IMG/VR virus record: IMGVR_UViG_3300025770_000870
Span: 177,919-241,918 of that record
DNA: 64,000 nt
Direction: 5' to 3' (one strand)
Shown piece by piece: positions 17,810-51,611 of the stretch. The notes beneath the pieces are model-generated. The model searched no databases and was not told the origin of the DNA. It worked only from the letters and a program-made list of their open reading frames with translations. Within the stretch, counting starts at the first letter, position 1. The number at the start of each line of letters is the position of its first letter. The position numbers and the translations under genes were made by a program.

Positions 17810-19713
17810 TACATTTTTATGAAATCTATTTGTTTCTTTTCTAAATCAACACCATTAACTATGATAGTTATCTCATCACCTAATCTGATTCTATCCCCAA
17901 CATCATTAAAGATTTGATAGTTTTGTGTGTCTATATTATAATTACCTTCTAAAGATTGGTATCTTATCATACCCTCACATTTACTTTCTGTTAATTCAAC
18001 ATATAATCCCCAATCAGTTACACCAGAAACTATCCCAGTGAATACTTTCCCAATTTTATCTAAAAGATATTCGGCTTGTTTGTATTTTATAGAATCTCTT
18101 TGGGCTCTGGATGCTATCAATTCTCTACTTGAACACCATTTAGCCTCATCTTCAACTTTAGTAGGGTTTCCTTGTTTCTTATTATGTAAGAAATCAAGTA
18201 ACATTCTATGTGTCATTAAATCCGGATACCTACGTATTGGACTTGTGAAGTGTGAATAGTGTGTGAATCCTAATCCATAATGTCCTATGTTTTGTATTGT
18301 GTATGTTGCTTTAGACATACATCTAGTTACAACCGTACTTAACATATTTTCTTCTGGTGTTCCTTTAACATCTTGTAATAACTTGTTTATAGATTTTTTA
18401 AGATCTTCAGATTCGCCTTCTATTTTGAATTCGTGACCAAAAGTCTTACACACATTTGATAATGCTGTTAACTTCTCCATATTAGGAGTATCATGTACTC
18501 TAAATACATTAGTTCTCGAATTACTTGATAATAGTTTAGCAACAGATTTATTAGCTAGTAACATAAATTCTTCAATTAATTTATTAGCTTCTTTCTGTTC
18601 TTTGAAATAAACACCAATTGGTTTCTTATTATCCTCTGCTAATTCGAATCGAACTTCCACACCACCCATCTCTAATGAACCGTCTTTAATTCTTTTCTTT
18701 CTTATTTTCTTAGCTAATGTGTTTAGATGATTAATCATCAATGGATAAACACTACCATCACCTGTGTATTTTTCATCATTACCCTCGATTATCTCTTGAG
18801 CATCCTCATAAGCAAATCTCATATCAGAATGTATGACTGTTTTACCGTGCCATTCTTTAACAATTTTACCATCCGAGTCTAGTGTAAATACAACTGAAAA
18901 TGCTAACCTATCTTCATTAGGTTTTAATGAACATATTCCATTACTAAGTCTTTCTGGTAACATAGATACACATCTATCAACTAGATACACAGATGTTGCT
19001 CTTTCATAAGCTTCATCATCTAATTTAGTACCAGGTTTAACATAGTGTCCAACATCAGCAATATGTACTCCTACTTCAAATCTATTATCATTCATTACTT
19101 TAAGTGATAATGCGTCATCAAAATCACGAGCATCTACTGGGTCGATTGTTATTGTTGTTGTATCTCTCATATCTCTACGAGATTTTATTTCCTTTTCGGT
19201 TATTACTTCTGGTGTGAGTTCTGATTCGTTTATAACATCTTGTGGAAAATCAACTGGTAATCCATATTCATACATTATCGAATTCATCTCAGCGTTATTA
19301 TCACCAACATCTCCTAATATCTTAGTTATCTTAGCTTGTGGGGATTTACTATCTACCCACTTTGTGAGTTCGACTATAACCTTTTGGTTATCTTCCGATT
19401 TTAATCCACCCTTGATATAGAAATCAACTGGTATTCTTTTATTATCTGCTATAACAAATGTTGATTTACCATTAATATGTACCTTACCAACGAATTCTTT
19501 CTTATTCCTTGATATTGTGTTAATTACTTTAGCTTCTAATTTCCTATCACCCCTAAATACTTCTACAATTACTTTATCTAAGTGTAAAGCATTTTTAGTA
19601 TTCTTCTTATAAATGAAAATTGATTTATCGTTTATTGTGATTGTTGCGTGTCTGTTTGTTGAGAACTCTATTTGACCTTCGTAACGTTCTCCTTCTTTTA
19701 TATTATTATTCAT
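17809..19713 (-). CDS. rnr: ribonuclease R (RNB family 3'-5' exoribonuclease)
   Basis: TIDPVDARDFDDALS, VHIADV, HFTSPIRRYPD, C-terminal S1 domain; likely start MNNNIKEG at 19713. Confidence 0.95.
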   Translation of the reverse strand: MNNNIKEGERYEGQIEFSTNRHATITINDKSIFIYKKNTKNALHLDKVIVEVFRGDRKLEAKVINTISRNKKEFVGKVHINGKSTFVIADNKRIPVDFYIKGGLKSEDNQKVIVELTKWVDSKSPQAKITKILGDVGDNNAEMNSIMYEYGLPVDFPQDVINESELTPEVITEKEIKSRRDMRDTTTITIDPVDARDFDDALSLKVMNDNRFEVGVHIADVGHYVKPGTKLDDEAYERATSVYLVDRCVSMLPERLSNGICSLKPNEDRLAFSVVFTLDSDGKIVKEWHGKTVIHSDMRFAYEDAQEIIEGNDEKYTGDGSVYPLMINHLNTLAKKIRKKRIKDGSLEMGGVEVRFELAEDNKKPIGVYFKEQKEANKLIEEFMLLANKSVAKLLSSNSRTNVFRVHDTPNMEKLTALSNVCKTFGHEFKIEGESEDLKKSINKLLQDVKGTPEENMLSTVVTRCMSKATYTIQNIGHYGLGFTHYSHFTSPIRRYPDLMTHRMLLDFLHNKKQGNPTKVEDEAKWCSSRELIASRAQRDSIKYKQAEYLLDKIGKVFTGIVSGVTDWGLYVELTESKCEGMIRYQSLEGNYNIDTQNYQIFNDVGDRIRLGDEITIIVNGVDLEKKQIDFIKM

Positions 19714-19723
19714 ATTCCTTTTA

Positions 19724-20137
19724 TTAGGAAATATCGTTTTGTTTATTATCGCGTTTGGATATGTTGTCAACACCGTACTTATCTATAAGTGTTTTTTTCA
19801 TTTTTTTCAATATTTTATTGTTTTGTATTGGATAGTCAACACCGTAATTTTCTCTTAATGATTTTTTCCTTTTTGATTCTGAGCATTTTCTACAAGAGTA
19901 TTCACCCCAGTTATTATCATATTTAATATAGTTCTTGAATATTACATCCTTTTCGATTCCACATTTATCACACTTACACTTTATTTTATAGTGGGATCCT
20001 TTGGATAGTAATTCAACTGGTATTATTAATAATTCACCAATTGTAACATCACTATATCCTAGATTTTCATAGTATGAATAGTTTGCTTCGCTTATTTTAA
20101 CTTTTATCTCTCTAGTTATTATCATAAAAAACCTCAA
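19724..20137 (-). CDS. zinc-ribbon protein with KYGV repeats (homing-endonuclease-like DNA-binding remnant)
   Basis: CKCDKC...CRKC followed by NYGVDYP and KYGVDNI repeats; no nuclease motif seen. Confidence 0.5.
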   Translation of the reverse strand: MRFFMIITREIKVKISEANYSYYENLGYSDVTIGELLIIPVELLSKGSHYKIKCKCDKCGIEKDVIFKNYIKYDNNWGEYSCRKCSESKRKKSLRENYGVDYPIQNNKILKKMKKTLIDKYGVDNISKRDNKQNDIS

Positions 20138-20215: not shown

Positions 20216-20234
20216 TCTGTAAAGAATCCACCTT
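20216..20234 (+). promoter_or_regulatory. 19-bp element upstream of the prohead protease late promoter
   Basis: TCTGTAAAGAATCCACCTT, identical copy at 22439-22457 with the same spacing to ATATATAC. Confidence 0.7.
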
Positions 20235-20294: not shown

Positions 20295-22436
20295 ATGAAA
20301 CCGGTTTTAATAGTAGAAAATTCACAAAACCAACTTATTAGAGAGAGTAACTCTGCTAATAAGGGGTACACATTAGGTGGTACATTCACCGAATTCGGTG
20401 TCAAGAACAGAAATGAACGTATTTATTCGGCTGATAAATTTTTACCAGCATTGAATGAAATGAATGAACGTATAAGTGGCTTAGGTGCTGTTTATGGTGA
20501 ATTCGATCATCCAGACGTTTTTGACACATCACTCTCAAGAGCCTCGCATATTATCACAAAGGCAAGTTATATCCAAGAGAAAAATATCGTAGCGGGAGAG
20601 ATTAAATTACTAAGTACTTACTGGGGTAAGGAAGCAAAAGCACTTGTCGATGACGGGTGTCCTGTATTCGTTTCTTCAAGAGCTGCTGGTATTACTGAAT
20701 CTGATGGTTCAGTTTCCCTTAAAAAATTATTTACTTATGACATTGTTGCTGACCCAGGATTTGCGTCAGCTAAAATGGATGTTAAGGTACTTAATGAGTC
20801 ATTGGGATATAATGACGAAAAATCTAACTTTAGGATATATGAAATGTCCGATGAGTCAAAAATAAATGAGTTATTCAATATGAACAAAAATGAGTTTGTA
20901 ACAAAAAAACAATTGACTGACTACTCTAACTACTTAGTTAACGAATTAGCATCAACTAAGAAGACAGTTAATACAGCCATTACTAAAGGTAATGTAGCTC
21001 CAAAGAAATTGGAACAATTATTAGAGTATTATGAAGAGTTAAACAACTCTAATTCAAAAGTAGCTAAGTATCTTGATTATTTATCAGAAAAGGTACAAAT
21101 AGTAGTTAATGAGAATAAATCATTAAAGAAGACAACTGAGAAATTAGTTAAACATAATGATTATTTAGCAGAAAACTTAGAGAAATCTATTAATTACGCT
21201 GAGTATTTAGGTGAAAACTTAGATAAGAACATTGATTATTCTGAGTATTTAGCTGAGAATTTAGACAAGAACATATCTTATGCTGAGTATTTAGCTGAGA
21301 ATGTTGATAAAAACATTTCATATTCTGAGTATTTAGCTGAGAGTTTAGATAAGAACATTGCTTATTCTGAATATATCGCTGAGAATTTAGACAAAAACAT
21401 CGCTTATTCTGAGTATATCGCTGAGAATTTAGACAAAAACATTGCTTACTCTGAGTATATCGCAGAAAACGTTGATAATAATATCGCTTATTCTGAATAC
21501 TTATCTGAGCATGTTGAAGGTAACATTGCTTACTCTGAGTATATCGCAGAACATTTAGATGATAACATCGCTTATTCTGAGTATGTAGCAGAGAATCTTG
21601 ACAAATCAATTAATTATCAAGGATTGATAGTTGAGAGATTAAACGGAGATAAATTATTTGAATCTGTTGAAGGATCTGAAAGCTTCCCATCTCTAGACGA
21701 TGCTGGTTTTGAAGCTTTTGATGATGAAGAAAACAAAGATGAAGAAAATTGTAATCTTGAAGTATCATTAGATAATAATGATGAAGAAAATGGTGTTGAA
21801 GAATCTGTTGAGAATACAGATGATTACGCAACAGAAGAAAACAAAGATGAAGAAAATAAAGATGAAGAAAACAAAGAAGATAAAACTGAAAGCCATGATA
21901 TGGTAAACGGTGATAGTGATTCTGAATTATCTGAATCTATTGATAAACTAATTGAAGAAGCTAAAAAACGAAAAGTTTCTGAAACAACAGATGTGAATTT
22001 CTTGAAGTTCATGTCTAAATCACAAGTTGACAGCTTTTACGCTTTGTCAAATGACGAACAAGAGTCAGTTAAAGTCCATATAAACGAAAGAGACTACTTT
22101 ACTCAAAAAGATGTTTTGTTATTGATATCTGAAGCACTATCAACTAAGAACGAATCTCTTGAAGAGAGAATAATCAGATTGATGCCTGAAAACACAAAGC
22201 CAATCTGGGAACAATTAAACGACACTTCTAAGAAATCTATCTTGTCACAAGCTAGATTATATCCAGAAGACGTTTTAACTACTGAGGCACAAGTTGAACA
22301 TTTTTGGTCAACTAGAAAGCTAAAGACAAATGAGTCTGTAACAAAGAAACTTGTATCACATGAAAGCCTTATCCAAGAAGATAAACTTTCAGATAATGAT
22401 GTTCAAGCGATAATGGAAAGATTCAAAAATATTTAA
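20295..22436 (+). CDS. prohead protease (gp21-like) fused to a scaffold/core domain
   Basis: KNRNERIY, YGEFDHP, SHII, VSSRAAG, DIVADPG; then 14-aa repeats and an acidic region. Confidence 0.9.
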   Translation: MKPVLIVENSQNQLIRESNSANKGYTLGGTFTEFGVKNRNERIYSADKFLPALNEMNERISGLGAVYGEFDHPDVFDTSLSRASHIITKASYIQEKNIVAGEIKLLSTYWGKEAKALVDDGCPVFVSSRAAGITESDGSVSLKKLFTYDIVADPGFASAKMDVKVLNESLGYNDEKSNFRIYEMSDESKINELFNMNKNEFVTKKQLTDYSNYLVNELASTKKTVNTAITKGNVAPKKLEQLLEYYEELNNSNSKVAKYLDYLSEKVQIVVNENKSLKKTTEKLVKHNDYLAENLEKSINYAEYLGENLDKNIDYSEYLAENLDKNISYAEYLAENVDKNISYSEYLAESLDKNIAYSEYIAENLDKNIAYSEYIAENLDKNIAYSEYIAENVDNNIAYSEYLSEHVEGNIAYSEYIAEHLDDNIAYSEYVAENLDKSINYQGLIVERLNGDKLFESVEGSESFPSLDDAGFEAFDDEENKDEENCNLEVSLDNNDEENGVEESVENTDDYATEENKDEENKDEENKEDKTESHDMVNGDSDSELSESIDKLIEEAKKRKVSETTDVNFLKFMSKSQVDSFYALSNDEQESVKVHINERDYFTQKDVLLLISEALSTKNESLEERIIRLMPENTKPIWEQLNDTSKKSILSQARLYPEDVLTTEAQVEHFWSTRKLKTNESVTKKLVSHESLIQEDKLSDNDVQAIMERFKNI
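21174..21635 (+). repeat. 11 x 42-bp in-frame tandem repeat (NLDKNIAYSEYIAE consensus)
   Basis: units counted in the translation from NLEKSINYAEYLGE to NLDKSINYQGLIVE. Confidence 0.9.
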
Positions 22437-22438
22437 TG

Positions 22439-22457
22439 TCTGTAAAGAATCCACCTT
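22439..22457 (+). promoter_or_regulatory. 19-bp element upstream of the major capsid late promoter
   Basis: identical to 20216-20234. Confidence 0.7.
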
Positions 22458-22521: not shown

Positions 22522-24252
22522 ATGTCACACATTAGAATAGACAAACAAAAAGCTATGAAGAAATGGTCTCCAGTATTAGAGAACATGGGAGTTGCTGGTG
22601 AAGATAGATTGGATTGGATGTCAGAATATGCTGAATTTCACTCAATCAATGAAAACGCTTACGCAAACGCTTCAAACGTATCGGGTATGGGAGCTGTAGT
22701 AGCTGCACAACCTAATTCATTAGCTGGTAACACAATTGGCAATTACGCTGACTCAACTGGTTCAGGTGATGTTGGTCAAAACCTTTTACCGGTAGCGATG
22801 AAAATAGCAGCTCAAACAATCGGTTTAGATTTAGTAGCTGTTAAACCTTCTCCAGGTCCAAAAATTGATTTATTATATATCGACTTTAGATATGATGATG
22901 CTCATTTAGGAGATTCAGACGAAAGACCACAAGTCTTTAAGATTGCACCAAACGCTACATTTTTAACTACTGGTGCTGGTGGTATGACAGCAGTTATCGC
23001 TGGATTAAGAGCTCAATTAGCTACGAATACAATCACTGAAACAGTTGGTGGTTTAACTGGTAGAATGTGGAATGATATCACAGATGGTTCAGATGTAGTT
23101 GTAGAACCAACACCTTCAAAAGAAGGAAAAGTTGAATTTTTAGGATTCTCTAGAATTGATGGTTATCCAATGTTCAGAGCTTACAGACAGATGAATACAT
23201 CTCACACAGATGTTGGTTCAGCTCAAGCAAACTGGGGATTTGACCCGACTAGAAACACATTTAGTCCTACAATGTCAATGGCTTCTCAAATTACTGATTT
23301 AGGAGATGTTACTTTAACTGATGAGCCTACTATTGAATTAGTATCAGCTCTTGAAGATCACATTCCTGGTTTCTCTGCAAACTGGATGTCGGATGCTACT
23401 GGCCCTGCTGGTAACTATCCAATGGATAGAGAAATGGACGATAAAAGATACTCTGGTATCATCGGACCAAAAATTAGTTCTAAAACAGTTGCCGTAGGTA
23501 CTATTGAAGTATCTTCAGCTCTTAGAAGAACTGAAATTGAAGATATCAAAGCTAACACTGGTATGGATATCGTTCAAAAAATGGAGTCAATTCTTGTTAA
23601 TGAATTATCTCAAACAATCTCTAAGCAAATTGTTGCTAAGATATTTGAAATGGGTTCACTTAACAGATTATCTGCACCAGCTTATGTTGGAACAGCACCG
23701 GCACCATTAGCGGGACAAACAATCTTTGACTTAAACACAGCTTATGCAACTGTTGCTGCTGGTAATGGAAACGTTGGTGGTGAAACTACACACGCTGTTC
23801 AAAGAAAGCTTGTAACTAAGATAGCTCACGCTTCTAACTACATCGCTACAGAGGGACGTGTTGGTCCAGCTCAATACCTTATTACAAATGGGGGATTAGC
23901 AGCAGCACTTTCTGATATCTCTGGTTATACAATTAACCCAGTGAAATCAAAAATCAATGGTCAAGGTCAATTATACCCAGTAGGTTCAATTGGAGATATT
24001 TCAATATATGTTGATCCATATATGAGATATAACGACAATAGAATTGCTCTTGGTAGAAAGAACAATCCAGATCAACCAGGTATTATTTTTGTACCTTACT
24101 TAATGGCTCAGTCTATATCTGTAATTTCTGAAGCGACTTTCGCTCCTAGAATGTTACTAAGATCTAGATACGCTGTAACAGAAGTTGGTTGGTTCCCACA
24201 AAAACAATTTATGACTATCGAAGTTACAGATGTGAATACACTTCTTAACTAA
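22522..24252 (+). CDS. major capsid protein (T4 gp23-like)
   Basis: KKWSPVLE start, QTIGLDLVAVKP, IFVPY, TFAPRMLLRSRYAV; lies downstream of protease/scaffold. Confidence 0.92.
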   Translation: MSHIRIDKQKAMKKWSPVLENMGVAGEDRLDWMSEYAEFHSINENAYANASNVSGMGAVVAAQPNSLAGNTIGNYADSTGSGDVGQNLLPVAMKIAAQTIGLDLVAVKPSPGPKIDLLYIDFRYDDAHLGDSDERPQVFKIAPNATFLTTGAGGMTAVIAGLRAQLATNTITETVGGLTGRMWNDITDGSDVVVEPTPSKEGKVEFLGFSRIDGYPMFRAYRQMNTSHTDVGSAQANWGFDPTRNTFSPTMSMASQITDLGDVTLTDEPTIELVSALEDHIPGFSANWMSDATGPAGNYPMDREMDDKRYSGIIGPKISSKTVAVGTIEVSSALRRTEIEDIKANTGMDIVQKMESILVNELSQTISKQIVAKIFEMGSLNRLSAPAYVGTAPAPLAGQTIFDLNTAYATVAAGNGNVGGETTHAVQRKLVTKIAHASNYIATEGRVGPAQYLITNGGLAAALSDISGYTINPVKSKINGQGQLYPVGSIGDISIYVDPYMRYNDNRIALGRKNNPDQPGIIFVPYLMAQSISVISEATFAPRMLLRSRYAVTEVGWFPQKQFMTIEVTDVNTLLN

Positions 24253-24753: not shown

Positions 24754-26109
24754 ATGGCAGGAGAAACTAAAAGAGTAAAATTTTCGGATAAATTACTAAA
24801 GATACTTAAAAGTATGGAGGATAATAATAGTTATCTAGCTTTTGAACTTCTTTGGATGAATGATCCAACTGCAAAATATCATAATGGCCTTAATATAACA
24901 AATGTTGATTGTGGTACAGATAAATCATCAGATTTTAATTTCACTGTTGTTATTGGTGGTAAGAAAAATATAATGAAAATTGGTAAATTCATTAGATATT
25001 ACTTTTCTAATCTATTTAGTAGTGATGAGATAACAAAATTTGCTCATGCTTTCAATAGAGTGAAGAATGGTGGTAAGGCTGAACAATCTGGTAAAAAAGT
25101 TGAAATACCTGAGTTTAGTTATAATCCAAAAGACCCTAGGTCTACATTCTTATCACTTGTTACAGAAACATACCCACACCCACATGAGGAGAAAGTTATG
25201 AAATACTTACCAAAAGACTTAGATAAAGATGAATTTGGTAATTATTATAAAGTGATTCCTGGTGATGATACTACAATGTTTAGTTCTCACCTTGATACGG
25301 CTGATAGAAGTCCAGTTCCTACTAACCTATTCACTAAAGAGGTAGATGGGGATGAGATAATCTATACTGATGGTAGTACAATATTAGGGGCTGATGATAA
25401 GTCTGGAGTTACTGTTATGATGTATATGATGGTTCATAATATCCCAGGTATTTATTATTTCTTTATTGGTGAAGAAAGAGGTGGTATTGGTTCTAATCAA
25501 TTAGCTGATGTTTATGATAAATTTGATTTCCTAAAAAATGTTAAGAAATGTATTTCTTTTGATAGAAGAAGAACAATTTCTGTTATAACACATCAAATGG
25601 GTGGTCGTTGTTGTTCTGATGCTTTTGGTACAGGACTTTGTAAAGAGTACAATAAACAAGGACTTAACCTTTCATTGGATAATGGTGGCGTTTATACTGA
25701 TTCTGCTTCATTTATGGATATTATTCCTGAGTGTACTAATTTATCTGTTGGTTATTTAAATGAACACACAGGTAGAGAAGAACAAAACATGACATTTTTA
25801 ATACAGTTGTGTAAAACTTCTATTAATGTTGATTGGGCTGGATTACCAGTTGCTAGAAAAGTAGGTTTGAACCTTGATTTAGTGCAGAAGCACAAATCTT
25901 TAATTGATGTTATAAAAAATGCAGTATTTGAATTAGAGGTGAAGATGGTTGGGTTTGAGGATAAAATATATATAAGAATAGATTTAGATGATACTAATCT
26001 AGTAACTGTTTATGATACTTTGAATATTGTACAAAACTTACTTGATAAACATAAAGTAGATAGTATGTGTATTTTTACTGAAACATATCTTAAAATAGAA
26101 TTAACATAA
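24754..26109 (+). CDS. M28-family metallopeptidase with N-terminal extension
   Basis: SHLDT, GADDKSG, GEERG, SFDRR, TDSA, NEHT zinc-ligand motifs. Confidence 0.8.
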   Translation: MAGETKRVKFSDKLLKILKSMEDNNSYLAFELLWMNDPTAKYHNGLNITNVDCGTDKSSDFNFTVVIGGKKNIMKIGKFIRYYFSNLFSSDEITKFAHAFNRVKNGGKAEQSGKKVEIPEFSYNPKDPRSTFLSLVTETYPHPHEEKVMKYLPKDLDKDEFGNYYKVIPGDDTTMFSSHLDTADRSPVPTNLFTKEVDGDEIIYTDGSTILGADDKSGVTVMMYMMVHNIPGIYYFFIGEERGGIGSNQLADVYDKFDFLKNVKKCISFDRRRTISVITHQMGGRCCSDAFGTGLCKEYNKQGLNLSLDNGGVYTDSASFMDIIPECTNLSVGYLNEHTGREEQNMTFLIQLCKTSINVDWAGLPVARKVGLNLDLVQKHKSLIDVIKNAVFELEVKMVGFEDKIYIRIDLDDTNLVTVYDTLNIVQNLLDKHKVDSMCIFTETYLKIELT

Positions 26110-27755: not shown

Positions 27756-28727
27756 ATGTCTGTTATTAGCTATTTTGGTGGCAAGTCCTCAAAGGTCTTC
27801 CATCAGTTCATCAACACAAGAATACCAAAAGATGGTATCAAAACTTATGTAGAACCATTCTCAGGTGCAATGGGAACGTATATGGATGACCCAAATCTTA
27901 AATTCGATACAGTTGTTTATAATGATAAGAACCGCCACCAGGTGAACTTATATAAGTGTTGTCAAAATCCAACAGAAATGTTGATACATATAGATAATCT
28001 AAAGAGTGGTTTATTACACACAACAGAAACGGATCCAATAAAAAATTGGGATTTTTATAAAGCTATTTATAAGACATTTCAAAAGAATGATTTCTTAGAT
28101 GATATGGATTTTGAGATTGGGGATTATGAAAAAGCTGCTATGTATGCTTTCTTAATTACATCAGCTCATAATTCAGTTTATCCAAGAGGAGCAGGGTTTA
28201 ATGGTTATAAGAAGAATAATGGCAAACTTAAAATAGAAGCACTTGTTAATAAACTAAAGAAGGGTAAGTACACAGAGAAATTGGAATCAATTACTGAGTT
28301 CTATAATATTGATTTTGAGGAATTGATAAACAAATATGATTCAGTAGATACATTTCTTTACTTAGACCCACCTTACGCTAGATTTGACGAGGCTAAAGGA
28401 ATGGATGATGCTAGGAGACTATTCTGGTATGGATGTGATGATGAAGGTGTCTTTGGACCCGAATCACATAGAAGGTTATTAGAAATGCTTAAAAAGACTG
28501 ATTGTAGATGGTCATTATCTTATTATTACTTTCCTTTATTAGAAGAATTATTACCAAGAGACCAATATAACTGGGTTGAGAAAGAAGTATTTAGAAGTTC
28601 TGCTCATGGTGGTAACAATTCGGATAATAAAAAGGTACAAGCTAAAGGTGTTGAGATGCTTATTATGAATTATAATCCAGAAACGGGAGAAAAAATCACT
28701 AATAAGGATGTCGAATGTGAACTTTAA
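27756..28727 (+). CDS. DNA adenine methyltransferase (Dam/D12 class)
   Basis: YFGGKS, YVEPFSGA, YNDKN, LYLDPPY. Confidence 0.9.
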   Translation: MSVISYFGGKSSKVFHQFINTRIPKDGIKTYVEPFSGAMGTYMDDPNLKFDTVVYNDKNRHQVNLYKCCQNPTEMLIHIDNLKSGLLHTTETDPIKNWDFYKAIYKTFQKNDFLDDMDFEIGDYEKAAMYAFLITSAHNSVYPRGAGFNGYKKNNGKLKIEALVNKLKKGKYTEKLESITEFYNIDFEELINKYDSVDTFLYLDPPYARFDEAKGMDDARRLFWYGCDDEGVFGPESHRRLLEMLKKTDCRWSLSYYYFPLLEELLPRDQYNWVEKEVFRSSAHGGNNSDNKKVQAKGVEMLIMNYNPETGEKITNKDVECEL

Positions 28728-29460
28728 GATTGTTGATATTTTCGAGAGTGTTAAGGATGATATTTTTTCAATTCAACCATATTTATCTATTAATAATAAT
28801 CTAAAAAATTTCACTACTAATACATTTAGTTTATCAATTCCGATGGAATTGGATGGGTTTGGTGTTGATACTGATGCTGAGATGATAAGTCTTATTAGGA
28901 TTGAGATGAATCAAAGTATTTATAAAACAATTTTGAAAGAATTATTCAATACTTCAAAATTTGATTATATAGATATTTCTAAAACTGTTAATACTCACCA
29001 ATCTGTTAATGATATTATTGATTTTTTATCTATTGATTGTATAGATAAAAAATATAAGTATTTAGTTACGAATACTTCTATGGCTAATTCAATAGGTGAT
29101 AGTTCATTATTTAACTTTAAACCAAGTGCATCGGTTGTAGAATCTCAAGGTTTACCATATTTATTTGGGTCTTTGATTAAATATGATGTTTATATAGATC
29201 CTTTTATGAAATTTGATGATAATAGAATTTGCTTATTTGATTCTTGTGAGATTAATATAGAGAATATAAATCAAACTGTTACATCAGCGGCCACATTTGC
29301 ACCTAAGATGATGATAAGTTATGATGTGGCTTTTAAAATAGCAGACTCTAAGGTTATATTTGTTTTAGATGGTAATGAATCAAGTAGTTCTTATAAGCAA
29401 TATAAACAATTACAGCGTGATATAAAAATAAATTCTTTATTAGATGGCTCAACAGATTAA
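28708..29460 (+). CDS. truncated major-capsid paralog with C-terminal RDIKINSLL motif
   Basis: YDVYIDPFMKFDDNRICL and AATFAPKMMI align with ISIYVDPYMRYNDNRIAL and EATFAPRMLL of the 22522 capsid. Confidence 0.75.
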   Translation: MSNVNFKIVDIFESVKDDIFSIQPYLSINNNLKNFTTNTFSLSIPMELDGFGVDTDAEMISLIRIEMNQSIYKTILKELFNTSKFDYIDISKTVNTHQSVNDIIDFLSIDCIDKKYKYLVTNTSMANSIGDSSLFNFKPSASVVESQGLPYLFGSLIKYDVYIDPFMKFDDNRICLFDSCEINIENINQTVTSAATFAPKMMISYDVAFKIADSKVIFVLDGNESSSSYKQYKQLQRDIKINSLLDGSTD

Positions 29461-44423: not shown

Positions 44424-45752
44424 ATGAGCAAGTTAGTAACATTAAACGGGTTAAATGATGAAGAAATATTAAATGATATATTCATCGATGAGATAATTGT
44501 CCTTGAAGATATACAGGGAAGTAAAATATGGGTTAATTGGGATGGTAAGCATTTTAATATCAAACCTAAATCTATATCAAATGAGTCAATAAATCTAATT
44601 GACTTAGCAATGCAAAATTATTATAATCCGGCTATCAATTATTTAAATTCATTAGATGATAGAACAAAAAGCCTTTTAAATAAAAAATGGTGGTTTTGTT
44701 TCGAGTATTTTCCTGATGAGCAACCTGCTAATATAGAGTATAATAGAGTTCCTAAGAATAATCTTGTTCTTACAGCTATTTCTAAGTCTAGAAAATATGA
44801 ATTTACTATTGAAGAGTTAGATGAGTATTCTAGATTATTTAATGTTGATGTGGTGCCGGTTATATATCAAGGTACTTTGACCGAAAGTATGAAAGAAGCG
44901 ATAAAGTATTTTATTAATACTAGTGAGGATGATTTAGAGTATATTTTTGGTGAAAAGTCATTTGCATTCTTCTTTTATGGAATATTAAACCCATCAGTTA
45001 ATAACTCTTTCTTAATGGATAATGAATTCCAAAATAATGTTGAGAAACTTATTATTAAGAGTAAAACAAAGGATATTTCATTTCAGTTATTAAATCCTTT
45101 ATATAAAAGGTTGAGTGATGATAATCATACAGACTTTGTTGAGATTTATACATTAATATTAATTAATTTCTTGAATTTTTCTCAATCTATTAATTTAGAA
45201 GATATTAAATTGAAAGGTGATAGAAAAGATGAAGTTTACATATATTTAGTTTCTAAAATATTCAATGTTTATATATCGGAGGTCAAACAAGATTTACTTG
45301 ACTTTGACTTTGTTGTTCCTGAATTCTTTGATAAGGATAAATTTAAGATAAATATTGAATTGATTAGTAATAAATTAACAAAGGATTATATAAAAGAGAG
45401 TGATAAATTAGAATATATTTTTAAGGTTATTCTTGGATCTTTCAACAAGAAAAGAAAGAAACCAATTGGTATATTCACTGAGAATACAGTTAAGTTATTT
45501 AATAAATTTGTAGTTGATATCGATGATTATATCGATACTTATTTAGGAAAACTACATGAAATTGAATTAGGTAGATCTGGTCTACTAGATTTCGGTGACT
45601 TCTTTGATATTCAATATGATACTGATGGAGAGGGTGAAGTTTATCCAGATGTTTACTCAGAGTTTTCTAAGACTGGTGGTCAGAACAAGAAGAAGAAAAA
45701 AGGTAAGGGTGGTAAATTCCCAATTGATCCAGGTAAAATTCCATTTAAATAA
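44424..45752 (+). CDS. RNA-ligase-fold protein lacking the catalytic Lys
   Basis: LEDIQGSK in place of EKxDGxN, FCFEYF (motif III-like), VVPVIYQG. Confidence 0.5.
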   Translation: MSKLVTLNGLNDEEILNDIFIDEIIVLEDIQGSKIWVNWDGKHFNIKPKSISNESINLIDLAMQNYYNPAINYLNSLDDRTKSLLNKKWWFCFEYFPDEQPANIEYNRVPKNNLVLTAISKSRKYEFTIEELDEYSRLFNVDVVPVIYQGTLTESMKEAIKYFINTSEDDLEYIFGEKSFAFFFYGILNPSVNNSFLMDNEFQNNVEKLIIKSKTKDISFQLLNPLYKRLSDDNHTDFVEIYTLILINFLNFSQSINLEDIKLKGDRKDEVYIYLVSKIFNVYISEVKQDLLDFDFVVPEFFDKDKFKINIELISNKLTKDYIKESDKLEYIFKVILGSFNKKRKKPIGIFTENTVKLFNKFVVDIDDYIDTYLGKLHEIELGRSGLLDFGDFFDIQYDTDGEGEVYPDVYSEFSKTGGQNKKKKKGKGGKFPIDPGKIPFK

Positions 45753-45943
45753 TGATTGATATTAAAATGACCTCTGTCGAGGTAAAGGCCGAAGTACGCG
45801 AACTAAAATGTAAATATACTCGTGAAATGGCTAAGGATATACACTATTATAGTGGTTTAGATCCTTTTAGTATGGATAATAGAAGAACAACAAGAAAAGA
45901 TTCGATTAATAATATTTTTAATATAACAAAACATGATAAATAA
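45752..45943 (+). CDS. 63-aa gp23-capsid-like fragment with RKDSINNIF motif
   Basis: SVEVKAEVRELKCKYTREMAKDIHYYSGLD resembles the gp23 block V.AKSR.LKAEYT.ELAQDL.A.HG.D. Confidence 0.6.
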   Translation: MIDIKMTSVEVKAEVRELKCKYTREMAKDIHYYSGLDPFSMDNRRTTRKDSINNIFNITKHDK

Positions 45944-47195
45944 TCCGCCTATAAAGAATATGAAGGTATCAAAAAAATTATCCAGTACGGATTCTTCCAA
46001 AAATATAGTTGAAAAGCTAAACAAGAAAACTTTCCTATTACAATACTTACCATCCGTTTTAGAATACTTAGAATCAGAAAAATACATAAATTATAAAAAT
46101 GAAAAGTTAAAAACAGCTTACTTGATCGATATCATACATAATATGGTATTAAAATATTATTTCAAGAAAGAGAATAAATTTGTTATAAATGCAACTATAT
46201 TGAAAGATAAGTATGGATATCTTTATAATTATTATATCAATTATCTAATTGAGACCAAGATAATAAGTATGGTTTCTAATTATAGGAAAGGTGTATCTTC
46301 TCGTAAATATTCACTAAATGCTAAAATCATCAAATCAAAGATTCAAAGAAGATATAGAAACAAAGATAAAGTCTTATTGAAGAAATATAAAAAGAAAGTA
46401 ATGGATAGCATTGACTTCTCTGATAATGATGATTATTTGATAGGTAAAGATATCCGAGAGAAATTAATATCTGACCTTTTTTCCGTTGAGATTCAATTCG
46501 ATAGAGCTATATTTTTCCTGGATGCATTAAAAGATGAAAAATATGATGTCTATAATAGAAATGTTTATTCTGTTGAGTGTGTTAATGATAAGCATATATT
46601 TTATCACTTTGATAGCTATGGTAGAATGCACACCAATTTCACAATACTTAGATCATTCATTAGAAAGAATTGTTTATTGATAGATGGTGAGGAAACTTGT
46701 GAGATAGATATTAAAAATAGCCAACCATTATTCCTATCTAAATTAATAAAAGATAGTGATACTAAGTGGGTCAAGGAGGAAGAGTTTGAATTATTTAGAG
46801 AACTAACACTTAGTGGTAATTACTACCAATACATGATGAATGTATTGGGTATTAAAAATAGAAACGATGCTAAGGAATTAACATACAAAGTTCTTTTTGG
46901 TAGAAACATTACTAGTAAGGCTGATATTGGATTTAGAAAGGCTTTCCCGACTATACACAATTTTATAAAATTATATAAAAAGGATAATGGTAATTATAAA
47001 ACGATGGCTTATGATTTACAAAAAGCAGAGTCGAATCTTATATTCAATCGAATAATAAGACGTATAATTGTATTATACCCAGAAATAAAAATGATAACGG
47101 TACATGATAGTATTGTTTTTCCTAAAAAATATAAAGACATTATTGATGATATCTTTGAACAAGAACTTGAAAATGAATTCAATTTAACAAAATAA
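45933..47195 (+). CDS. family-A polymerase-like palm/fingers protein with N-terminal wHTH-like region
   Basis: YGRMH, motif A EIDIKNSQP, motif B RNDAKELTYKVLFG, motif C TVHDSIV; no exonuclease domain. Confidence 0.6.
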   Translation: MINNPPIKNMKVSKKLSSTDSSKNIVEKLNKKTFLLQYLPSVLEYLESEKYINYKNEKLKTAYLIDIIHNMVLKYYFKKENKFVINATILKDKYGYLYNYYINYLIETKIISMVSNYRKGVSSRKYSLNAKIIKSKIQRRYRNKDKVLLKKYKKKVMDSIDFSDNDDYLIGKDIREKLISDLFSVEIQFDRAIFFLDALKDEKYDVYNRNVYSVECVNDKHIFYHFDSYGRMHTNFTILRSFIRKNCLLIDGEETCEIDIKNSQPLFLSKLIKDSDTKWVKEEEFELFRELTLSGNYYQYMMNVLGIKNRNDAKELTYKVLFGRNITSKADIGFRKAFPTIHNFIKLYKKDNGNYKTMAYDLQKAESNLIFNRIIRRIIVLYPEIKMITVHDSIVFPKKYKDIIDDIFEQELENEFNLTK

Positions 47196-47382: not shown

Positions 47383-47922
47383 GTGATTGATTTAACTAAC
47401 CCCAAAATATCATATATTGTGATATCATCTGAAAAGATTGATGATATTATGTCAATTTTGTATGCTAAAAATTATCAAATTATACCGATAAAGGGTTATT
47501 ATCAAGGTCAATATGAGGATTCATTGATGGCTTTTGGTGTTGATAATGATGAGTTAAGAAAAGATTTGATTTTTTTACTTAACCATTTTAGAGAGGATTG
47601 TGGTATAGTTAAATACTTTGGTGAGACCGGTGCTAAGAAAGTGTTCAAAGACGGCTCAGAGAAGCCCTTAGGTATCGTATTGTATAATACAGACTCAGAT
47701 AACATTTCATATTTATATGATGGTATATCGTTCTCTTTTGTTGAACAAGTTAGATATTGGAAACCTAAGAATAAAGAAGATTTTTCTGTTGGTATGTTAG
47801 TTGAATATATGAATAATAATAAGTGGTATGAAAAGGAAGTTATTAATCCATCAGAAGAATACCATAAGCTATATAAGCTTATGATAAAGTATGATAAGAT
47901 TAGAGTAGCTACTACTAACTAA
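47383..47922 (+). CDS. hypothetical protein (possible SAM-lyase/DUF3293-like fold)
   Basis: KGYYQGQYEDSLMAF...FREDCGIV pattern. Confidence 0.4.
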   Translation: MIDLTNPKISYIVISSEKIDDIMSILYAKNYQIIPIKGYYQGQYEDSLMAFGVDNDELRKDLIFLLNHFREDCGIVKYFGETGAKKVFKDGSEKPLGIVLYNTDSDNISYLYDGISFSFVEQVRYWKPKNKEDFSVGMLVEYMNNNKWYEKEVINPSEEYHKLYKLMIKYDKIRVATTN

Positions 47923-48718
47923 TCTCAAACCAAACAATTCGATTCTCGAATGTTGGTGTTTCTTTTATAAAATAAGTTTGATAATTATCTCCGTTATTAA
48001 CATTGTTAACAACATTTAATCCTGTACATCTCTCACCTTTTGGTCTTACTCCGATTACTTTACTTGGATTTATTTTACTTGAGTGTATTACTTGAGCCCC
48101 ATTTATATTACCTATGATGTCATCATAATTATTTGATAAATTAAAATTATATGATGTTGATAATAAGTATTCTACTATATTATCTCCTATAATAAATGCG
48201 GTAGCGGGACCTAAGTTACTTTTCATAGATAAAACATTACTAATAAATGTCATCTTTGTGATTATTCTTCTGGAATCAGCATCTGATTGTTCATTTGTTG
48301 TTAAAAATTTATCATTTTTTAATTTAAGAGTTACGTCTGTGTAAAATTTACATTTTTTCATTGGTTTACTTGTTAAAGTATCCAATGTTGATATAATATC
48401 ATTATATAATAATGCTTCACTTATGAATTTTTTAGCAGTTACATTTTGCGACATCATTCTTGTTGAGAATGTTCCAATTGTATCCAACCCATCATAAATA
48501 CCTTGCGGTAACCAATCCATATCATCATATTCTTCTTGTTTTTCAGCAAGAACAGAATTTATAGATGATTGTCTATGTCTTCTTTTGAGTTCATTCATTA
48601 TCCACTCATCATCAGATGATAAAGTATCCGTATAATAAATAACACCCTTGGGTAAAGAGGGTTTATTATTTTCTGTGTAATTACATATCAATTTTATATT
48701 AGACAGCAAGGTGCTCAT
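47915..48718 (-). CDS. degenerate major-capsid paralog fragment with RHRQSSINSVL motif
   Basis: RRIITKMTFISNVLSMKSNLGPATAFII aligns with capsid RKLVTKIAHASNYIATEGRVGPAQYLIT. Confidence 0.6.
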   Translation of the reverse strand: MSTLLSNIKLICNYTENNKPSLPKGVIYYTDTLSSDDEWIMNELKRRHRQSSINSVLAEKQEEYDDMDWLPQGIYDGLDTIGTFSTRMMSQNVTAKKFISEALLYNDIISTLDTLTSKPMKKCKFYTDVTLKLKNDKFLTTNEQSDADSRRIITKMTFISNVLSMKSNLGPATAFIIGDNIVEYLLSTSYNFNLSNNYDDIIGNINGAQVIHSSKINPSKVIGVRPKGERCTGLNVVNNVNNGDNYQTYFIKETPTFENRIVWFEIS

Positions 48719-49466
48719 ATTTGTTTTTCATTCCTATTTTTGGTATAGATGCGTTTGTTATCTTTTGTATTTCTTCTTTACTCATCTTGGAAGTTTTTTC
48801 TAATAATTGTAAAGTTCTTTGGTAATATCTATTATCAGGAGCCACTCTTTCATGGTATAGGTGATAACATCTAGCTTTTAATTCGGTGTGTTTCAAGAAG
48901 TGTTTAACTTTCATTGTTTGATAATCATCTTCACCACCCCAGCCTATAAAGTCTTCGTTCCACCCACCAATTCTTAATAAAGAATCTCGTCTGAAAATTG
49001 CTATACCTCCTGAAATATTTATTTTTTGGTTATCTGTCTCACCTCTACCAGGTCTATTAATATTAACAACCTGTTCCAAAGGTAGATTGGACTCCTGTGG
49101 ATTTAGATCAACCACGGAATGATATGGACTAACCATATCATATTCTGTTAATGCCTGGAGACCCTTTATGAAATCTTTTGGATTCATAACTAAATCAGAA
49201 TCACCACAAACAATTATGTTTGAGTTGGAGTGTTTTAATCCTATATTAAATGCCCAAGACCTATTATAAGGCATTTTTGATTTTATGAAAATATGCTTAC
49301 ATCTTAAATTTAAGTGTGATATTTTTGAGTGTTTATCTTGTTCTACAAGAATAATTTCTGATCCTGAAAAGGAGTTAGCCCAATCCAGTGTTCTTCTTAG
49401 GTTGTTTAACCTATCTATTGTGTGTCTATATCCTATTATAAACGTGAATTTGTATGATTGTTGCAT
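48699..49466 (-). CDS. glycosyltransferase (GT2/GT7 galactosyltransferase-like)
   Basis: YNRSWAFNIG, DSD motif, GGWNEDFIGWGGEDD, YHLYH. Confidence 0.88.
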   Translation of the reverse strand: MQQSYKFTFIIGYRHTIDRLNNLRRTLDWANSFSGSEIILVEQDKHSKISHLNLRCKHIFIKSKMPYNRSWAFNIGLKHSNSNIIVCGDSDLVMNPKDFIKGLQALTEYDMVSPYHSVVDLNPQESNLPLEQVVNINRPGRGETDNQKINISGGIAIFRRDSLLRIGGWNEDFIGWGGEDDYQTMKVKHFLKHTELKARCYHLYHERVAPDNRYYQRTLQLLEKTSKMSKEEIQKITNASIPKIGMKNKYEHLAV

Positions 49467-49571
49467 TAAAAAAGTTATTTTTTATTTATATAAACACTTA
49501 TAGCTTTTGTTTTATAGTTCTTAACTAAACATTATATAAATATTATTCTATAATACTTTAAATCTTATATT

Positions 49572-49976
49572 ATGGATAAAAAAGTAGGAAGATTTGAAAA
49601 AATATTTTTTCCTGAACTAAATATAAAAGTGGATTCTAAAATAGACACTGGTGCTTATAGCGTTTCTTTACACGTTGAGGATATCAACGAAGTGGATGGT
49701 AAATTATACTTCTGGGTTGGTGATGAATCTAATAAATTCATATATGATGATTTTAATATTATTAGTGTTAAGAGTTCTTTTGGTAAAAATCAAAAAAGAT
49801 ATTCTATAAAATTGAAGATGCATCTGGGTAAACTTACCTATGATGTTTTCGTATCACTGAGTGATAGAAAAAAAATGAAGTTTCCTTGTTTGATAGGTAG
49901 AAAATTTCTACATAAACACGGATTTTTGGTAGATGTGAGAAAAAAGAATTTACATGATAGAAATAAAAAAATGTAA
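49572..49976 (+). CDS. RimK-associated putative ATP-dependent zinc/aspartic protease
   Basis: SKIDTGAYSVSLH and LSDRKKMKFPCLIGRKFL. Confidence 0.88.
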   Translation: MDKKVGRFEKIFFPELNIKVDSKIDTGAYSVSLHVEDINEVDGKLYFWVGDESNKFIYDDFNIISVKSSFGKNQKRYSIKLKMHLGKLTYDVFVSLSDRKKMKFPCLIGRKFLHKHGFLVDVRKKNLHDRNKKM

Positions 49977-50528: not shown

Positions 50529-51611
50529 ATGAGAACTAGACGAAAATTTATTAAACTAACAAAGTTTACATATCCATATGGAACCGAAAATCAATTAAAA
50601 AAATTCTTACCGAAGGGATATACAGAAGATGAGCATGGTAATTTCTATTTGAAGATTGGTGATAAACCATCTACTATGTTTACTTGTCACCTTGATACGG
50701 CTTGTGCTGAACAAGAAAGAGTTAATCATGTATTTCGTGGTAAGTTTGTTGGTACTGATGGGACTACAATTTTAGGAGCTGATGATAAAGCCGGAATGGT
50801 TATTATCTTATCACTTATCGAAAAAAAAGTACCTGGACTTTATTACTTCTTTATTGGAGAGGAAGTTGGGTGTATTGGTTCAAACGCACTTTCCGGAACT
50901 TGGTTAAAAACTGAATTCTCTGAATACATTACAAAATGTGTATCTTTTGATAGAAGAGGTACTACTTCTGTTATTACAGAACAATTGTATGGTAGATGTG
51001 CGTCTGATGAATTCGCAACTGAACTTTCACTTAGATTAAATAATGTTGGTAAATTTAATTTCTCACCTGATGATACTGGAGTTCTAACAGACTCAATTAA
51101 CTTTATGGATTTTGTACCGGAGTGTACTAATATATCTGTTGGTTATTATAATGAACATGGTGGTGATGAAATCCAAGATTTGGATTTCTTGAAGAAATTA
51201 AGTAAAGCTGTTTGTGAAATTGATTGGGAAACACTTCCAATTAAAAGAGATCCAATATCTGATTTTGATGATGATGATGATGATTTACATGAGTATGAAG
51301 AAGATGGTAAATTCTCAACAGAGTTCTATTCATACTTTAAGAGTAAAGAAGATGTGAAGAAAATGTATATATCTATTAATCATATAGAATCCGAAAAAGC
51401 TGAAATACGCAATTGGTTATATGTGAGTGGTTCTTATCCTGGATTTACTGATATTTTATGGAATGGCCATAAATTAAGAGTTAAAATTAATGATGATATA
51501 GAAGTTGTTGGTGATAGAATTGAGTTAATTGATTTGATGCCGGAATTAGGATCTGTTCCTAAAAGTCAATTAAGTGCTAGTGTTAAAAAATATAGAAGTA
51601 TTGTGATGTAA
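50529..51611 (+). CDS. second M28-family metallopeptidase
   Basis: CHLDT, GADDKAG, GEEVG, SFDRRG, TDS, NEHG; clearly paralogous to the 24754 ORF. Confidence 0.8.
   Translation: MRTRRKFIKLTKFTYPYGTENQLKKFLPKGYTEDEHGNFYLKIGDKPSTMFTCHLDTACAEQERVNHVFRGKFVGTDGTTILGADDKAGMVIILSLIEKKVPGLYYFFIGEEVGCIGSNALSGTWLKTEFSEYITKCVSFDRRGTTSVITEQLYGRCASDEFATELSLRLNNVGKFNFSPDDTGVLTDSINFMDFVPECTNISVGYYNEHGGDEIQDLDFLKKLSKAVCEIDWETLPIKRDPISDFDDDDDDLHEYEEDGKFSTEFYSYFKSKEDVKKMYISINHIESEKAEIRNWLYVSGSYPGFTDILWNGHKLRVKINDDIEVVGDRIELIDLMPELGSVPKSQLSASVKKYRSIVM

What the first reader, a model, noticed from the sequence alone, without database searches (positions are those of the whole stretch)
47915..48718. Second, more diverged capsid-fragment protein
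The C-terminal half aligns with the capsid A-domain region: RRIITKMTFISNVLSMKSNLGPATAFII vs RKLVTKIAHASNYIATEGRVGPAQYLIT, then IGNINGAQV vs VGSIGDISI, and a terminal KETPTFENRIVWFEIS vs TEVGWFPQKQFMTIEVT. The shared tag lies near the N-terminus here, which suggests it is a portable module. The gene is coupled to a glycosyltransferase gene.
Basis: partly seen in the sequence, partly recalled or inferred. Interest (0 to 1): 0.65.

Follow-up and report, generated by a model that had tools for sequence, protein, structure and literature searches.

The report
Mini capsid-fold protein paired with glycosyltransferase
This giant-phage gene encodes a complete, miniature copy of the phage's own head-shell protein, not a fragment of it, and across a large metagenomic family it is almost always made together with a sugar-adding enzyme, which suggests an undescribed link between capsid-type proteins and glycan synthesis.

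Summary
The ORF at 47915-48718 (-) is real, 267 aa, and belongs to a conserved family: 190 clusters at 50% identity, mostly 225-280 aa.

Family-versus-MCP profile comparison gives 99% probability, E 6.5e-18. A family HMM picks the phage's gp23-type major capsid protein (MCP) out of 793 contig ORFs at E 3.5e-21. Pfam Gp23 is hit by 21 of 93 family members.

It is not a fragment. An AlphaFold2 model (pLDDT 79.5) is a whole compact HK97 fold over residues 3-267. Its best match is T4 gp23 (Z 16.6), then gp24 (13.4) and HK97 gp5 (12.5). The MCP's first ~100 residues and its insertion region are missing.

The "shared tag" is an ordinary P-domain strand that aligns with MCP 313-324, not a portable module.

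The glycosyltransferase link is confirmed and conserved. It is present in 12 of 14 contexts, down to 28% identity, usually with an 11-23 nt overlap. In LR756500 a family member is fused to a KdsD-like sugar isomerase inside a Kdo/glycan operon.

Best reading: an MCP paralogue that works with the glycosyltransferase, probably as a glycan-bearing or glycan-directing minor capsid subunit. That mechanism is inferred, not shown.

The parts
47915..48718 (-). Gene for the 267-aa mini-HK97 protein, a compact paralogue of the phage's gp23-type MCP
   Evidence: ORF. Conserved family. hhalign to MCP 99%, E 6.5e-18. AF2 model pLDDT 79.5, pTM 0.77. T4 gp23 Z 16.6, gp24 Z 13.4. dN/dS 0.30-0.39 at informative divergence.
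48548..48718 (-). Residues 1-57: N-terminal helix (2-11), E-loop-like beta hairpin (13-33) and spine helix (35-57)
   Evidence: DSSP of the model, block pLDDT 74-84. Weak hhalign match of residues 9-35 to MCP 102-126 (E 0.003). The MCP profile matches residues ~14-63 of family members P0140, P0163 and P0195 at MCP positions ~104-155. The VIA alignment starts at residue 1-3.
48467..48547 (-). Residues 58-84: acidic linker of variable length and low model confidence
   Evidence: pLDDT below 50 at residues 74-81. Length varies in the alignment, with a Ser-rich insert in P0015 and P0016.
47918..48466 (-). This part aligns with MCP 313-569.
   Evidence: hhalign. Invariant residues include R87, M89, the RRIITK block, G233 and W263-F264.
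48699..49466 (-). Upstream GT-A glycosyltransferase gene (255 aa), first gene of the two-gene unit
   Evidence: Pfam Glyco_transf_7C 5.6e-9 and Glycos_transf_2 4.2e-7. PHROG 1721 'galactosyl transferase' 7.9e-15. Orthologue lies upstream of the mini-HK97 gene in 12 of 14 contexts. dN/dS 0.03-0.10.
48699..48718 (-). 20-nt overlap between the end of the glycosyltransferase gene and the start of the mini-HK97 gene (translational coupling inferred)
   Evidence: Coordinates. Overlaps of 11-23 nt recur in 11 contexts.
49467..49571 (.). Divergent intergenic region between the glycosyltransferase gene (-) and the RimB-like protease gene (+). Presumed promoter region; no specific promoter is shown.
   Evidence: Sequence read. 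TATAAATA boxes at 49483-49490 (-) and 49535-49542 (+), but that octamer is not enriched in the window (28 found versus 22 expected).
47860..47886 (-). Terminator-like hairpin (11 pairs) 29 nt after the stop codon; possible end of the two-gene transcript
   Evidence: Consensus scan only: 3 sites found versus 0.5 expected in the region.
22522..24252 (+). The phage's gp23-type major capsid protein (576 aa), the homologue the target was compared with
   Evidence: Pfam Gp23 2.7e-26. 78% identical to the MCP of LR745206.
28708..29460 (+). The 'first fragment' (250 aa): a second MCP-derived paralogue that matches only MCP 313-568
   Evidence: BLASTP to MCP E 3e-15. hhalign 98.8%, E 5.8e-17, residues 25-237 versus MCP 313-568. 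AF2 pLDDT 67.5; best VIA row 7vrt_he Z 12.9, then 1yue (T4 gp24) Z 11.9.
45752..45943 (+). 63-aa micro-ORF resembling MCP positions ~305-343, conserved in the same synteny block
   Evidence: MCP-profile E 2.4e-4. Homologues carry precomputed Pfam Gp23 hits in L028, L029, L040 and L046. E 1.6e-6 in L046.

Best explanation
The gene encodes a complete but miniaturised HK97-fold paralogue of the phage's own gp23-type major capsid protein. It keeps the E-loop hairpin, spine helix, P-domain strand and A domain. It has lost the MCP's first ~100 residues (propeptide and N-arm region) and the internal ~150-residue variable region (the insertion domain, by position).

It is made from a two-gene unit in which a GT-A glycosyltransferase gene comes first and overlaps its start, so the two proteins are probably made together. 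I infer that they work together: the mini-capsid protein is either the acceptor of the glycan or the subunit that docks the enzyme onto the assembling capsid lattice. The likely outcome is a minor, glycan-bearing capsid-lattice component, possibly at special positions such as vertices.

Shown: homology to the MCP, the complete fold, family conservation, purifying but relaxed selection, and conserved linkage to the glycosyltransferase and to a sugar pathway.

Inferred: physical partnership with the enzyme, incorporation into the virion, and glycosylation.
For: Identity:
- hhalign 99%, E 6.5e-18.
- Family HMM versus contig ORFs: MCP at E 3.5e-21.
- MCP genes of nine other phages are hit.
- 21 of 93 members hit Pfam Gp23.
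- AF2 model pLDDT 79.5, pTM 0.77.
- All top Foldseek hits are HK97-fold capsid proteins, 155 of them at E<=1e-3.
- VIA: T4 gp23 Z 16.6 over residues 3-267.
- The N-terminal hairpin matches MCP ~104-155 in family members.

Functional gene:
- 190 clusters at 50% identity with conserved length.
- dN/dS 0.30-0.39 at informative divergence.

Link to glycan enzymes:
- An orthologous glycosyltransferase lies upstream on the same strand in 12 of 14 contexts, down to 28-29% identity of the partner. Eleven of these overlap by 11-23 nt.
- One distant context adds GT47, GT25 and FkbM-type methyltransferase genes.
- In LR756500 a family member (profile E 2e-20) is fused in one 408-aa ORF to a KdsD-like SIS domain (1e-16). 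It sits in an operon with KdsA-like, KdsB-like and KpsC/S-like genes, GT2/7C and GT1 glycosyltransferases, a pyruvyl transferase and methyltransferases.

Precedent from the literature: glycans on capsid and tail-tube subunits of mycobacteriophages, made by phage glycosyltransferases (Freeman et al. 2023, as cited in PMC12619734).
Against: - There is no direct evidence that the protein is in virions or is glycosylated.
- The complex prediction for glycosyltransferase plus target gave no verdict, so it counts neither way.
- The gene is 24 kb from the head module, on the other strand, and lacks the TATATATAC motif found upstream of the MCP gene.
- Its neighbours are not structural genes. They include a polymerase-like 420-aa protein and peptidases.
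- It has no Ser/Thr-rich C-terminal tail like the mycobacteriophage acceptors.
- The family is absent from LR756504, Lak-B6, PTm1 and MA9V-1, so it is not a core capsid gene.
- Two distant family members lack the glycosyltransferase.
- The SIS fusion is a single case, a cluster of one.
Confidence: 0.5

Rival explanations
1. It is a gp24-type vertex protein: an MCP paralogue that forms the pentamers at the eleven non-portal vertices. On this view the neighbouring glycosyltransferase has an unrelated job.
For: T4 gp24 is the known case of a second HK97-fold paralogue in gp23-type phages, and it matches the model at Z 13.4 with 211 residues aligned. A compact 297-aa 'head vertex protein' of Vibrio phage nt-1 is among the BFVD matches. 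In the near-complete 483-kb genome of the same phage, Pfam Gp23 finds no larger paralogue.
Against: The gene is not next to the MCP gene. T4 gp23 matches better than gp24 (Z 16.6 versus 13.4), and the family HMM does not match T4 gp24. The other paralogue (28708-29460) lies nearer the head genes, and its best structural matches include T4 gp24 (1yue, Z 11.9). The family is missing from several related megaphages. This reading leaves the conserved overlap with the glycosyltransferase and the SIS fusion unexplained.
Confidence: 0.2
2. It has no virion role. The capsid fold has been recruited as a scaffold or small shell that organises sugar-pathway enzymes, as encapsulin systems do, where a cargo gene sits just upstream of, or is fused to, an HK97-fold shell gene.
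For: The enzyme gene lies directly upstream and overlaps in 11 contexts. There is a fusion to a KdsD-like isomerase. Encapsulins match at Z 10-12.4, and a short N-terminal helix replaces a long N-arm.
Against: By sequence the protein descends from the phage's own gp23 lineage, and gp23 is the best structural match. There is no Pfam encapsulin hit. The conserved C-terminal tail of the glycosyltransferase coincides with the overlap and start region of the next gene, so it need not be a targeting peptide. A shell around a glycosyltransferase has no obvious use. The complex prediction gave no verdict.
Confidence: 0.15
3. It is an MCP mimic used in conflict: a decoy for host defences that sense the capsid protein, or a subunit that interferes with the assembly of competing phages.
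For: It is the fastest-evolving gene in its neighbourhood (dN 0.275 versus 0.131 for the MCP and 0.085 for the glycosyltransferase). The genome holds several other MCP-derived ORFs, including conserved micro-ORFs copying single MCP segments.
Against: This is purely inferential. No defence or anti-defence family was matched, although PADLOC was not searched. It does not explain the glycosyltransferase linkage.
Confidence: 0.1
4. One reading: a leftover fragment of the capsid gene that shares a portable tag with other fragments.
For: Short similarity TFSTRMM / TFAPRML / TFAPKMM.
Against: The fold is complete. The family has 190 clusters of conserved length and is under purifying selection. The 'tag' aligns to the regular P-domain strand at MCP 313-324.
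Confidence: 0.03

Closest known systems
T4 gp23 / Pfam Gp23 (PF07068) major capsid proteins
   Same: Homologous by profile comparison, same HK97 fold, and the best structural match (7vrt gp23, Z 16.6). Conserved blocks such as RRIITK...GPA match RKLVTK...GPA.
   Different: Less than half the length (267 versus 576 aa). It has no N-terminal ~100 residues and no insertion region. The target itself scores below Pfam's reporting level. It is encoded away from the head module and coupled to a glycosyltransferase.
T4 gp24 vertex protein, and compact vertex proteins such as that of Vibrio phage nt-1
   Same: A second, diverged HK97-fold paralogue of the MCP in a gp23-type phage. The structural match is Z 13.4.
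   Different: It is not adjacent to the MCP gene, has no insertion domain and shows no detectable sequence preference for gp24. Pentamer formation is untested, and it is absent from several relatives.
Encapsulin operons (cargo gene upstream of, or fused to, an HK97-fold shell gene)
   Same: The gene order is enzyme then HK97-fold protein, and one relative is fused to an enzyme domain. The fold is compact with a short N-terminal helix.
   Different: It is phage-encoded and descends from gp23. No encapsulin family match, no demonstrated targeting peptide, and the structural score is lower than for gp23.
Capsid glycosylation in mycobacteriophages (Freeman et al. 2023, cited in PMC12619734)
   Same: Phage glycosyltransferase genes lie beside the gene of a capsid-fold protein.
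   Different: There the acceptor is the MCP itself, through a C-terminal extension. Here the partner is a separate mini-paralogue with no such tail, and glycosylation has not been shown.

Membership tests
HK97-fold capsid protein superfamily | Fold with E-loop, spine helix, P domain and A domain | tested here: met
   AF2 model pLDDT 79.5. 155 Foldseek PDB hits at E<=1e-3, the listed top 50 all HK97-fold capsid or encapsulin shell proteins. VIA Z 16.6 (T4 gp23), 13.4 (gp24) and 12.5 (HK97 gp5) over residues 1-267.
Pfam Gp23 (PF07068) family | Significant sequence match to the family profile | tested here: inconclusive
   The target itself has no Pfam hit at E<=1. However, 21 of 93 family members hit Gp23 (best 2.1e-9), and the family profile matches gp23-type MCPs at E 3.5e-21, with hhalign at 99%.
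gp23-type major capsid protein | Insertion domain and N-terminal propeptide/N-arm | tested here: not met
   The alignment covers only MCP ~102-131 and 308-569. The model starts at gp23 residue ~103-106. Length is 267 aa versus 576.
gp23-type major capsid protein | Is the main shell subunit, encoded in the head module after the protease/scaffold gene | tested here: not met
   That position is held by ORF 22522-24252. The target lies 24 kb away on the other strand.
T4 gp24-type vertex protein | MCP paralogue in the same genome | tested here: met
T4 gp24-type vertex protein | Forms pentamers at capsid vertices | not testable with these tools
   Five copies exceed the complex tool's size limit. 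No virion data are available.
T4 gp24-type vertex protein | Closer to gp24 than to gp23 | tested here: not met
   VIA Z 13.4 for gp24 versus 16.6 for gp23. Family HMM scores 5.4 bits on T4 gp23 and -0.9 bits on gp24, both insignificant.
Encapsulin system | Sequence match to an encapsulin shell family | tested here: not met
   No Pfam hit. Encapsulins appear only as lower structural matches (Z 10-12.4).
Encapsulin system | Upstream cargo enzyme that binds the shell through a C-terminal targeting peptide | tested here: inconclusive
   The upstream enzyme gene is conserved (12 of 14 contexts). Conservation of its C-terminal tail coincides with the overlap and start region. The complex prediction gave no verdict.
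Phage capsid glycosylation module | Glycosyltransferase gene adjacent to the acceptor's gene | tested here: met
Phage capsid glycosylation module | Glycan attached to the capsid-fold protein | not testable with these tools
   This needs protein mass spectrometry or glycan staining.

The most novel reading that the evidence does not exclude
Megaphages have turned a stripped-down copy of their capsid protein into a dedicated partner of glycan-building enzymes. It would be either the acceptor subunit through which the head acquires a sugar coat, or an HK97-fold platform that tethers sugar-pathway enzymes. The conserved glycosyltransferase bicistron and the fusion to a KdsD-like isomerase in a Kdo operon both hint at this. 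It would be a new functional use of the HK97 fold in phages.
Probability: 0.3. Interest if true: 0.8.

Novelty: new variant of a known kind. Interest (0 to 1): 0.6.

Why it matters
Second HK97-fold paralogues are known in T4-type phages only as vertex proteins. Here a large, unannotated family has the following properties:
- No Pfam, PHROGs or NCBIfam model hits the target.
- It comprises 190 clusters at 50% identity.
- It is a minimal gp23-derived fold.
- It is genetically locked to a glycosyltransferase, and once fused to a sugar isomerase.

If the pair acts on the capsid, it would be the first sign that the largest known phages decorate their heads with glycans through a dedicated subunit. 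That would bear on host recognition, stability and immune or defence evasion. If it does not act on the capsid, it is a case of a capsid fold recruited for metabolism inside a virus. Either way, the two-gene unit is small enough to test directly by co-expression.

Tried and rejected
- Pfam, PHROGs and NCBIfam scans of the target gave nothing.
- A profile search of PDB sequences gave only a spurious CaMKII match.
- The ESM Atlas gave only weak capsid-like leads, because its own model of this protein is poor.
- Complex prediction on glycosyltransferase plus target gave no verdict (ipSAE 0.00). It is not evidence either way.
- The search for related loci with the broad alignment had no conserved stretch. 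With the narrow alignment it returned only three identical copies of the locus.
- Codon usage and GC3 do not mark the gene as MCP-like or highly expressed.
- TATAAATA is not enriched (28 versus 22 expected), so I make no late-promoter claim for the operon.
- The sigma-70 scan was at chance level.
- dS is saturated for the more distant pairs and based on very few changes for the closest pair. Only the contrast between genes is used.
- I rejected a lipoprotein signal at the conserved Cys12, because the N-terminus is too short and lacks a hydrophobic core (my reading).
- I rejected a targeting-peptide reading of the glycosyltransferase's C-terminal tail as unsupported.
- The 479-aa paralogue in LR756501 sits among phosphate-transport genes, so not every relative is glycan-linked.
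- phmmer of the glycosyltransferase against PDB sequences found nothing.
- PADLOC was not searched.

Full report
**Setting.** The window is the last 64 kb of a 241.9-kb IMG/VR viral contig. The same locus also lies in a 483-kb record rated 98% complete. The window carries T4-type head genes:
- large terminase, 784-2916
- portal, 15609-17306
- protease/scaffold, 20295-22436
- a Pfam Gp23 major capsid protein (MCP), 22522-24252

The MCP's nearest database relatives are the 460-735-kb 'uncultured phage' genomes LR745206 and LR756500-504. After those come the Lak phages and jumbo phages of Tenacibaculum and Chryseobacterium. The element is therefore a megaphage, probably infecting Bacteroidota; the host is an inference from these relatives. 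Table 11 reads the region without trouble, and no other genetic code was used.

**The observation.** BLASTP against the MCP aligns only 44 residues (27% identity, E 3e-4), and Pfam and PHROGs give nothing. The word-index search found 16 homologues at 30-97% identity, 146-269 aa long, most of them close to full length. The exhaustive profile search found 190 clusters at 50% identity, mostly 225-280 aa.

Profiles settle the homology:
- The 16-sequence profile singles out the MCP among all window ORFs (E 9.5e-6; next best 0.17).
- The 127-sequence profile finds it at E 3.5e-21 among 793 contig ORFs.
- hhalign of the family against an MCP alignment gives 99% probability, E 6.5e-18, for target 78-267 versus MCP 308-569.
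- The family profile also hits the MCP gene in LR745206, LR756500, LR756501, LR756502, LR756504, Lak-B6, PTm1, MA9V-1 and a cyanophage.
- Pfam Gp23 is hit by 21 of 93 family members.

**Not a fragment.** The AlphaFold2 model (16-sequence alignment; pLDDT 79.5, pTM 0.77) has these elements, in order:
- helix 2-11
- hairpin 13-33
- long helix 35-57
- poorly ordered acidic linker 58-84
- long strand 85-98
- helices and a sheet to the C-terminus

Foldseek returns only HK97-fold shell proteins, led by T4 gp23 and gp24. VIA-align gives the following:

| Match | Z | rmsd | Residues aligned | Model range vs chain range |
|---|---|---|---|---|
| T4 gp23 in the prohead (7vrt) | 16.6 | 4.2 Å | 207 | 3-267 vs 106-519 |
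| T4 gp24 (1yue) | 13.4 | 4.0 Å | 211 | 1-267 vs 31-419 |
| HK97 gp5 (8cfa) | 12.5 | 3.5 Å | 171 | 1-267 vs 128-382 |
| Encapsulins | 10-12.4 | | | |

Sequence supports the N-terminal assignment as well. Residues 9-35 weakly match MCP 102-126. In three family members the MCP profile matches residues ~14-63 at MCP positions ~104-155, in addition to the C-terminal part.

What is missing is the MCP's first ~100 residues and roughly residues 130-300. The MCP profile also fails to align that internal stretch with T4 gp23 (gp23 139-237). By position it corresponds to the insertion domain; this last point rests on my knowledge of gp23/gp24 structures, not on a test here.

**The 'tag'.** I took the tag to be TFSTRMM (residues 83-89), which resembles TFAPRML (MCP 539-545) and TFAPKMM (first fragment 196-202). 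The profile alignment puts residues 83-93 opposite MCP 313-324 (GIIGPKISSKTV). The family consensus there is I-S-P-x-x-x-S. So it is the regular P-domain strand in its normal place. The likeness to the later strand is a similarity between two neighbouring strands of one sheet, not a mobile module.

**The other paralogue.** ORF 28708-29460 (250 aa) is clearly MCP-derived (BLASTP E 3e-15; hhalign 98.8%, E 5.8e-17), but it matches only MCP 313-568. Its model is weaker (pLDDT 67.5, with one good model of five). Its best structural rows are 7vrt_he (Z 12.9) and, at a similar level, HRP29 and T7 capsid proteins and T4 gp24 (1yue, Z 11.9). Both paralogues are present in LR745206 and LR756502. Neither is found in LR756504.

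**Link to sugar enzymes.** The upstream gene 48699-49466 (-) is a GT-A glycosyltransferase: Glyco_transf_7C plus Glycos_transf_2, and PHROG 'galactosyl transferase'. It overlaps the target's start by 20 nt.

I examined 14 genomic contexts of family members.
- Twelve have the orthologous glycosyltransferase (profile E 7e-23 to 2e-165) upstream on the same strand.
- Eleven of those overlap by 11-23 nt.
- In one, an inserted opposite-strand DUF723 gene separates the two.
- The partner's identity to the target in these contexts falls to 28-29%.
- Two distant members lack the enzyme.

One distant context also holds GT47, GT25 and FkbM-type methyltransferase genes.

In LR756500 the family profile (E 2e-20) hits the first 220 residues of a single 408-aa ORF. 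The rest of that ORF is a KdsD-like SIS domain (Pfam SIS 1e-16), and the ORF is recorded from three contigs. It lies in a tightly packed operon with these genes:
- KdsA-like
- KdsB-like
- KpsC/S-like
- GT2/7C glycosyltransferase
- GT1 glycosyltransferase
- pyruvyl transferase
- two methyltransferases

The window's own phage has no KdsB homologue, but it has four GT2-type genes.

**Selection.** Between the window and LR745206:

| Gene | dN | dN/dS |
|---|---|---|
| Target | 0.275 | about 0.3-0.39 |
| MCP | 0.131 | |
| Glycosyltransferase | 0.085 | 0.03-0.10 |

So the target is under purifying selection but is the fastest-evolving protein in its neighbourhood. dS is saturated at that distance, so only the contrast between genes is meaningful.

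**Interpretation.**
- Firm: this is a real gene for a complete, minimal HK97-fold paralogue of the gp23-type MCP, belonging to a large unannotated family and genetically coupled to a glycosyltransferase.
- Inferred: the two proteins act together, with the mini-capsid protein as glycan acceptor or as the capsid-docking partner, giving a minor glycan-bearing capsid component. I put about 0.5 on this package.
- Arguments against a structural role: the gene is distant from the head module, has non-structural neighbours, lacks the TATATATAC motif seen before the MCP gene, and is absent from several relatives.

The complex prediction gave no verdict, and the read-mapping route was unavailable.

**Literature.** Searches found no description of such a pair. 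Capsid glycosylation is known for mycobacteriophages (Freeman et al. 2023, cited in PMC12619734). A distinct, unidentified vertex protein has been proposed for jumbo phage phAPEC6 (PMC7247149).

Noticed in passing
window 45752-45943 (+); G001 198805-198963, 335589-335696 and 369618-369809; own contig 103592-103855 and 110653-111057: Several micro-ORFs of 57-135 aa each resemble a different single segment of the gp23-type MCP (Pfam Gp23 E down to 9e-9). Some are conserved in LR745206 and in synteny in distant relatives. No explanation found.
   Followed up: partly
window 45933-47195 (+): A 420-aa protein with no family hit looks like a minimal family-A polymerase or single-subunit RNA polymerase palm. 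It has VHDS-like and R..AK...Y....FG-like motifs (my reading). The nearest ESM Atlas clusters score 0.97 and are auto-named accordingly. It is conserved next to the glycosyltransferase/mini-HK97 unit.
   Followed up: partly
LR756500.1 123000-137000 (L041): A megaphage operon encodes a Kdo-type pathway and glycan tailoring. It holds KdsA-like, KdsB-like and KpsC/S-like genes, GT2/7C and GT1 glycosyltransferases, a pyruvyl transferase and two methyltransferases. Its KdsD-like isomerase is fused to an HK97-like domain.
   Followed up: partly
window 20217-20234 and 22440-22457 (+): An identical 18-nt motif, CTGTAAAGAATCCACCTT, sits upstream of both the protease/scaffold gene and the MCP gene (2 found, 0.08 expected). 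It may be a shared regulatory site.
   Followed up: no
window, 11 sites, e.g. 22483, 24315, 43601 (-), 44386: TATATATAC is enriched (11 found versus 2.5 expected) and lies just upstream of many genes, including the MCP gene. It is a candidate phage promoter element, and it is absent upstream of the glycosyltransferase/mini-HK97 unit.
   Followed up: partly
window 17809-19773 (-): A full RNase R/II-type exoribonuclease gene (RNB 1e-110, with CSD2 and S1 domains) lies between the portal and protease/scaffold genes.
   Followed up: no
window 24754-26109 (+) and 50529-51611 (+): Two paralogous peptidase genes (PHROG 4191; weak M28 match). One follows the MCP gene. The other lies near the glycosyltransferase unit, beside a RimB-like retropepsin-type protease at 49572-49976.
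   Followed up: no
L048 4033-4962 (-): In one distant relative, a 309-aa DUF723 gene on the opposite strand is inserted between the glycosyltransferase and mini-HK97 genes. It is probably a mobile insertion.
   Followed up: no
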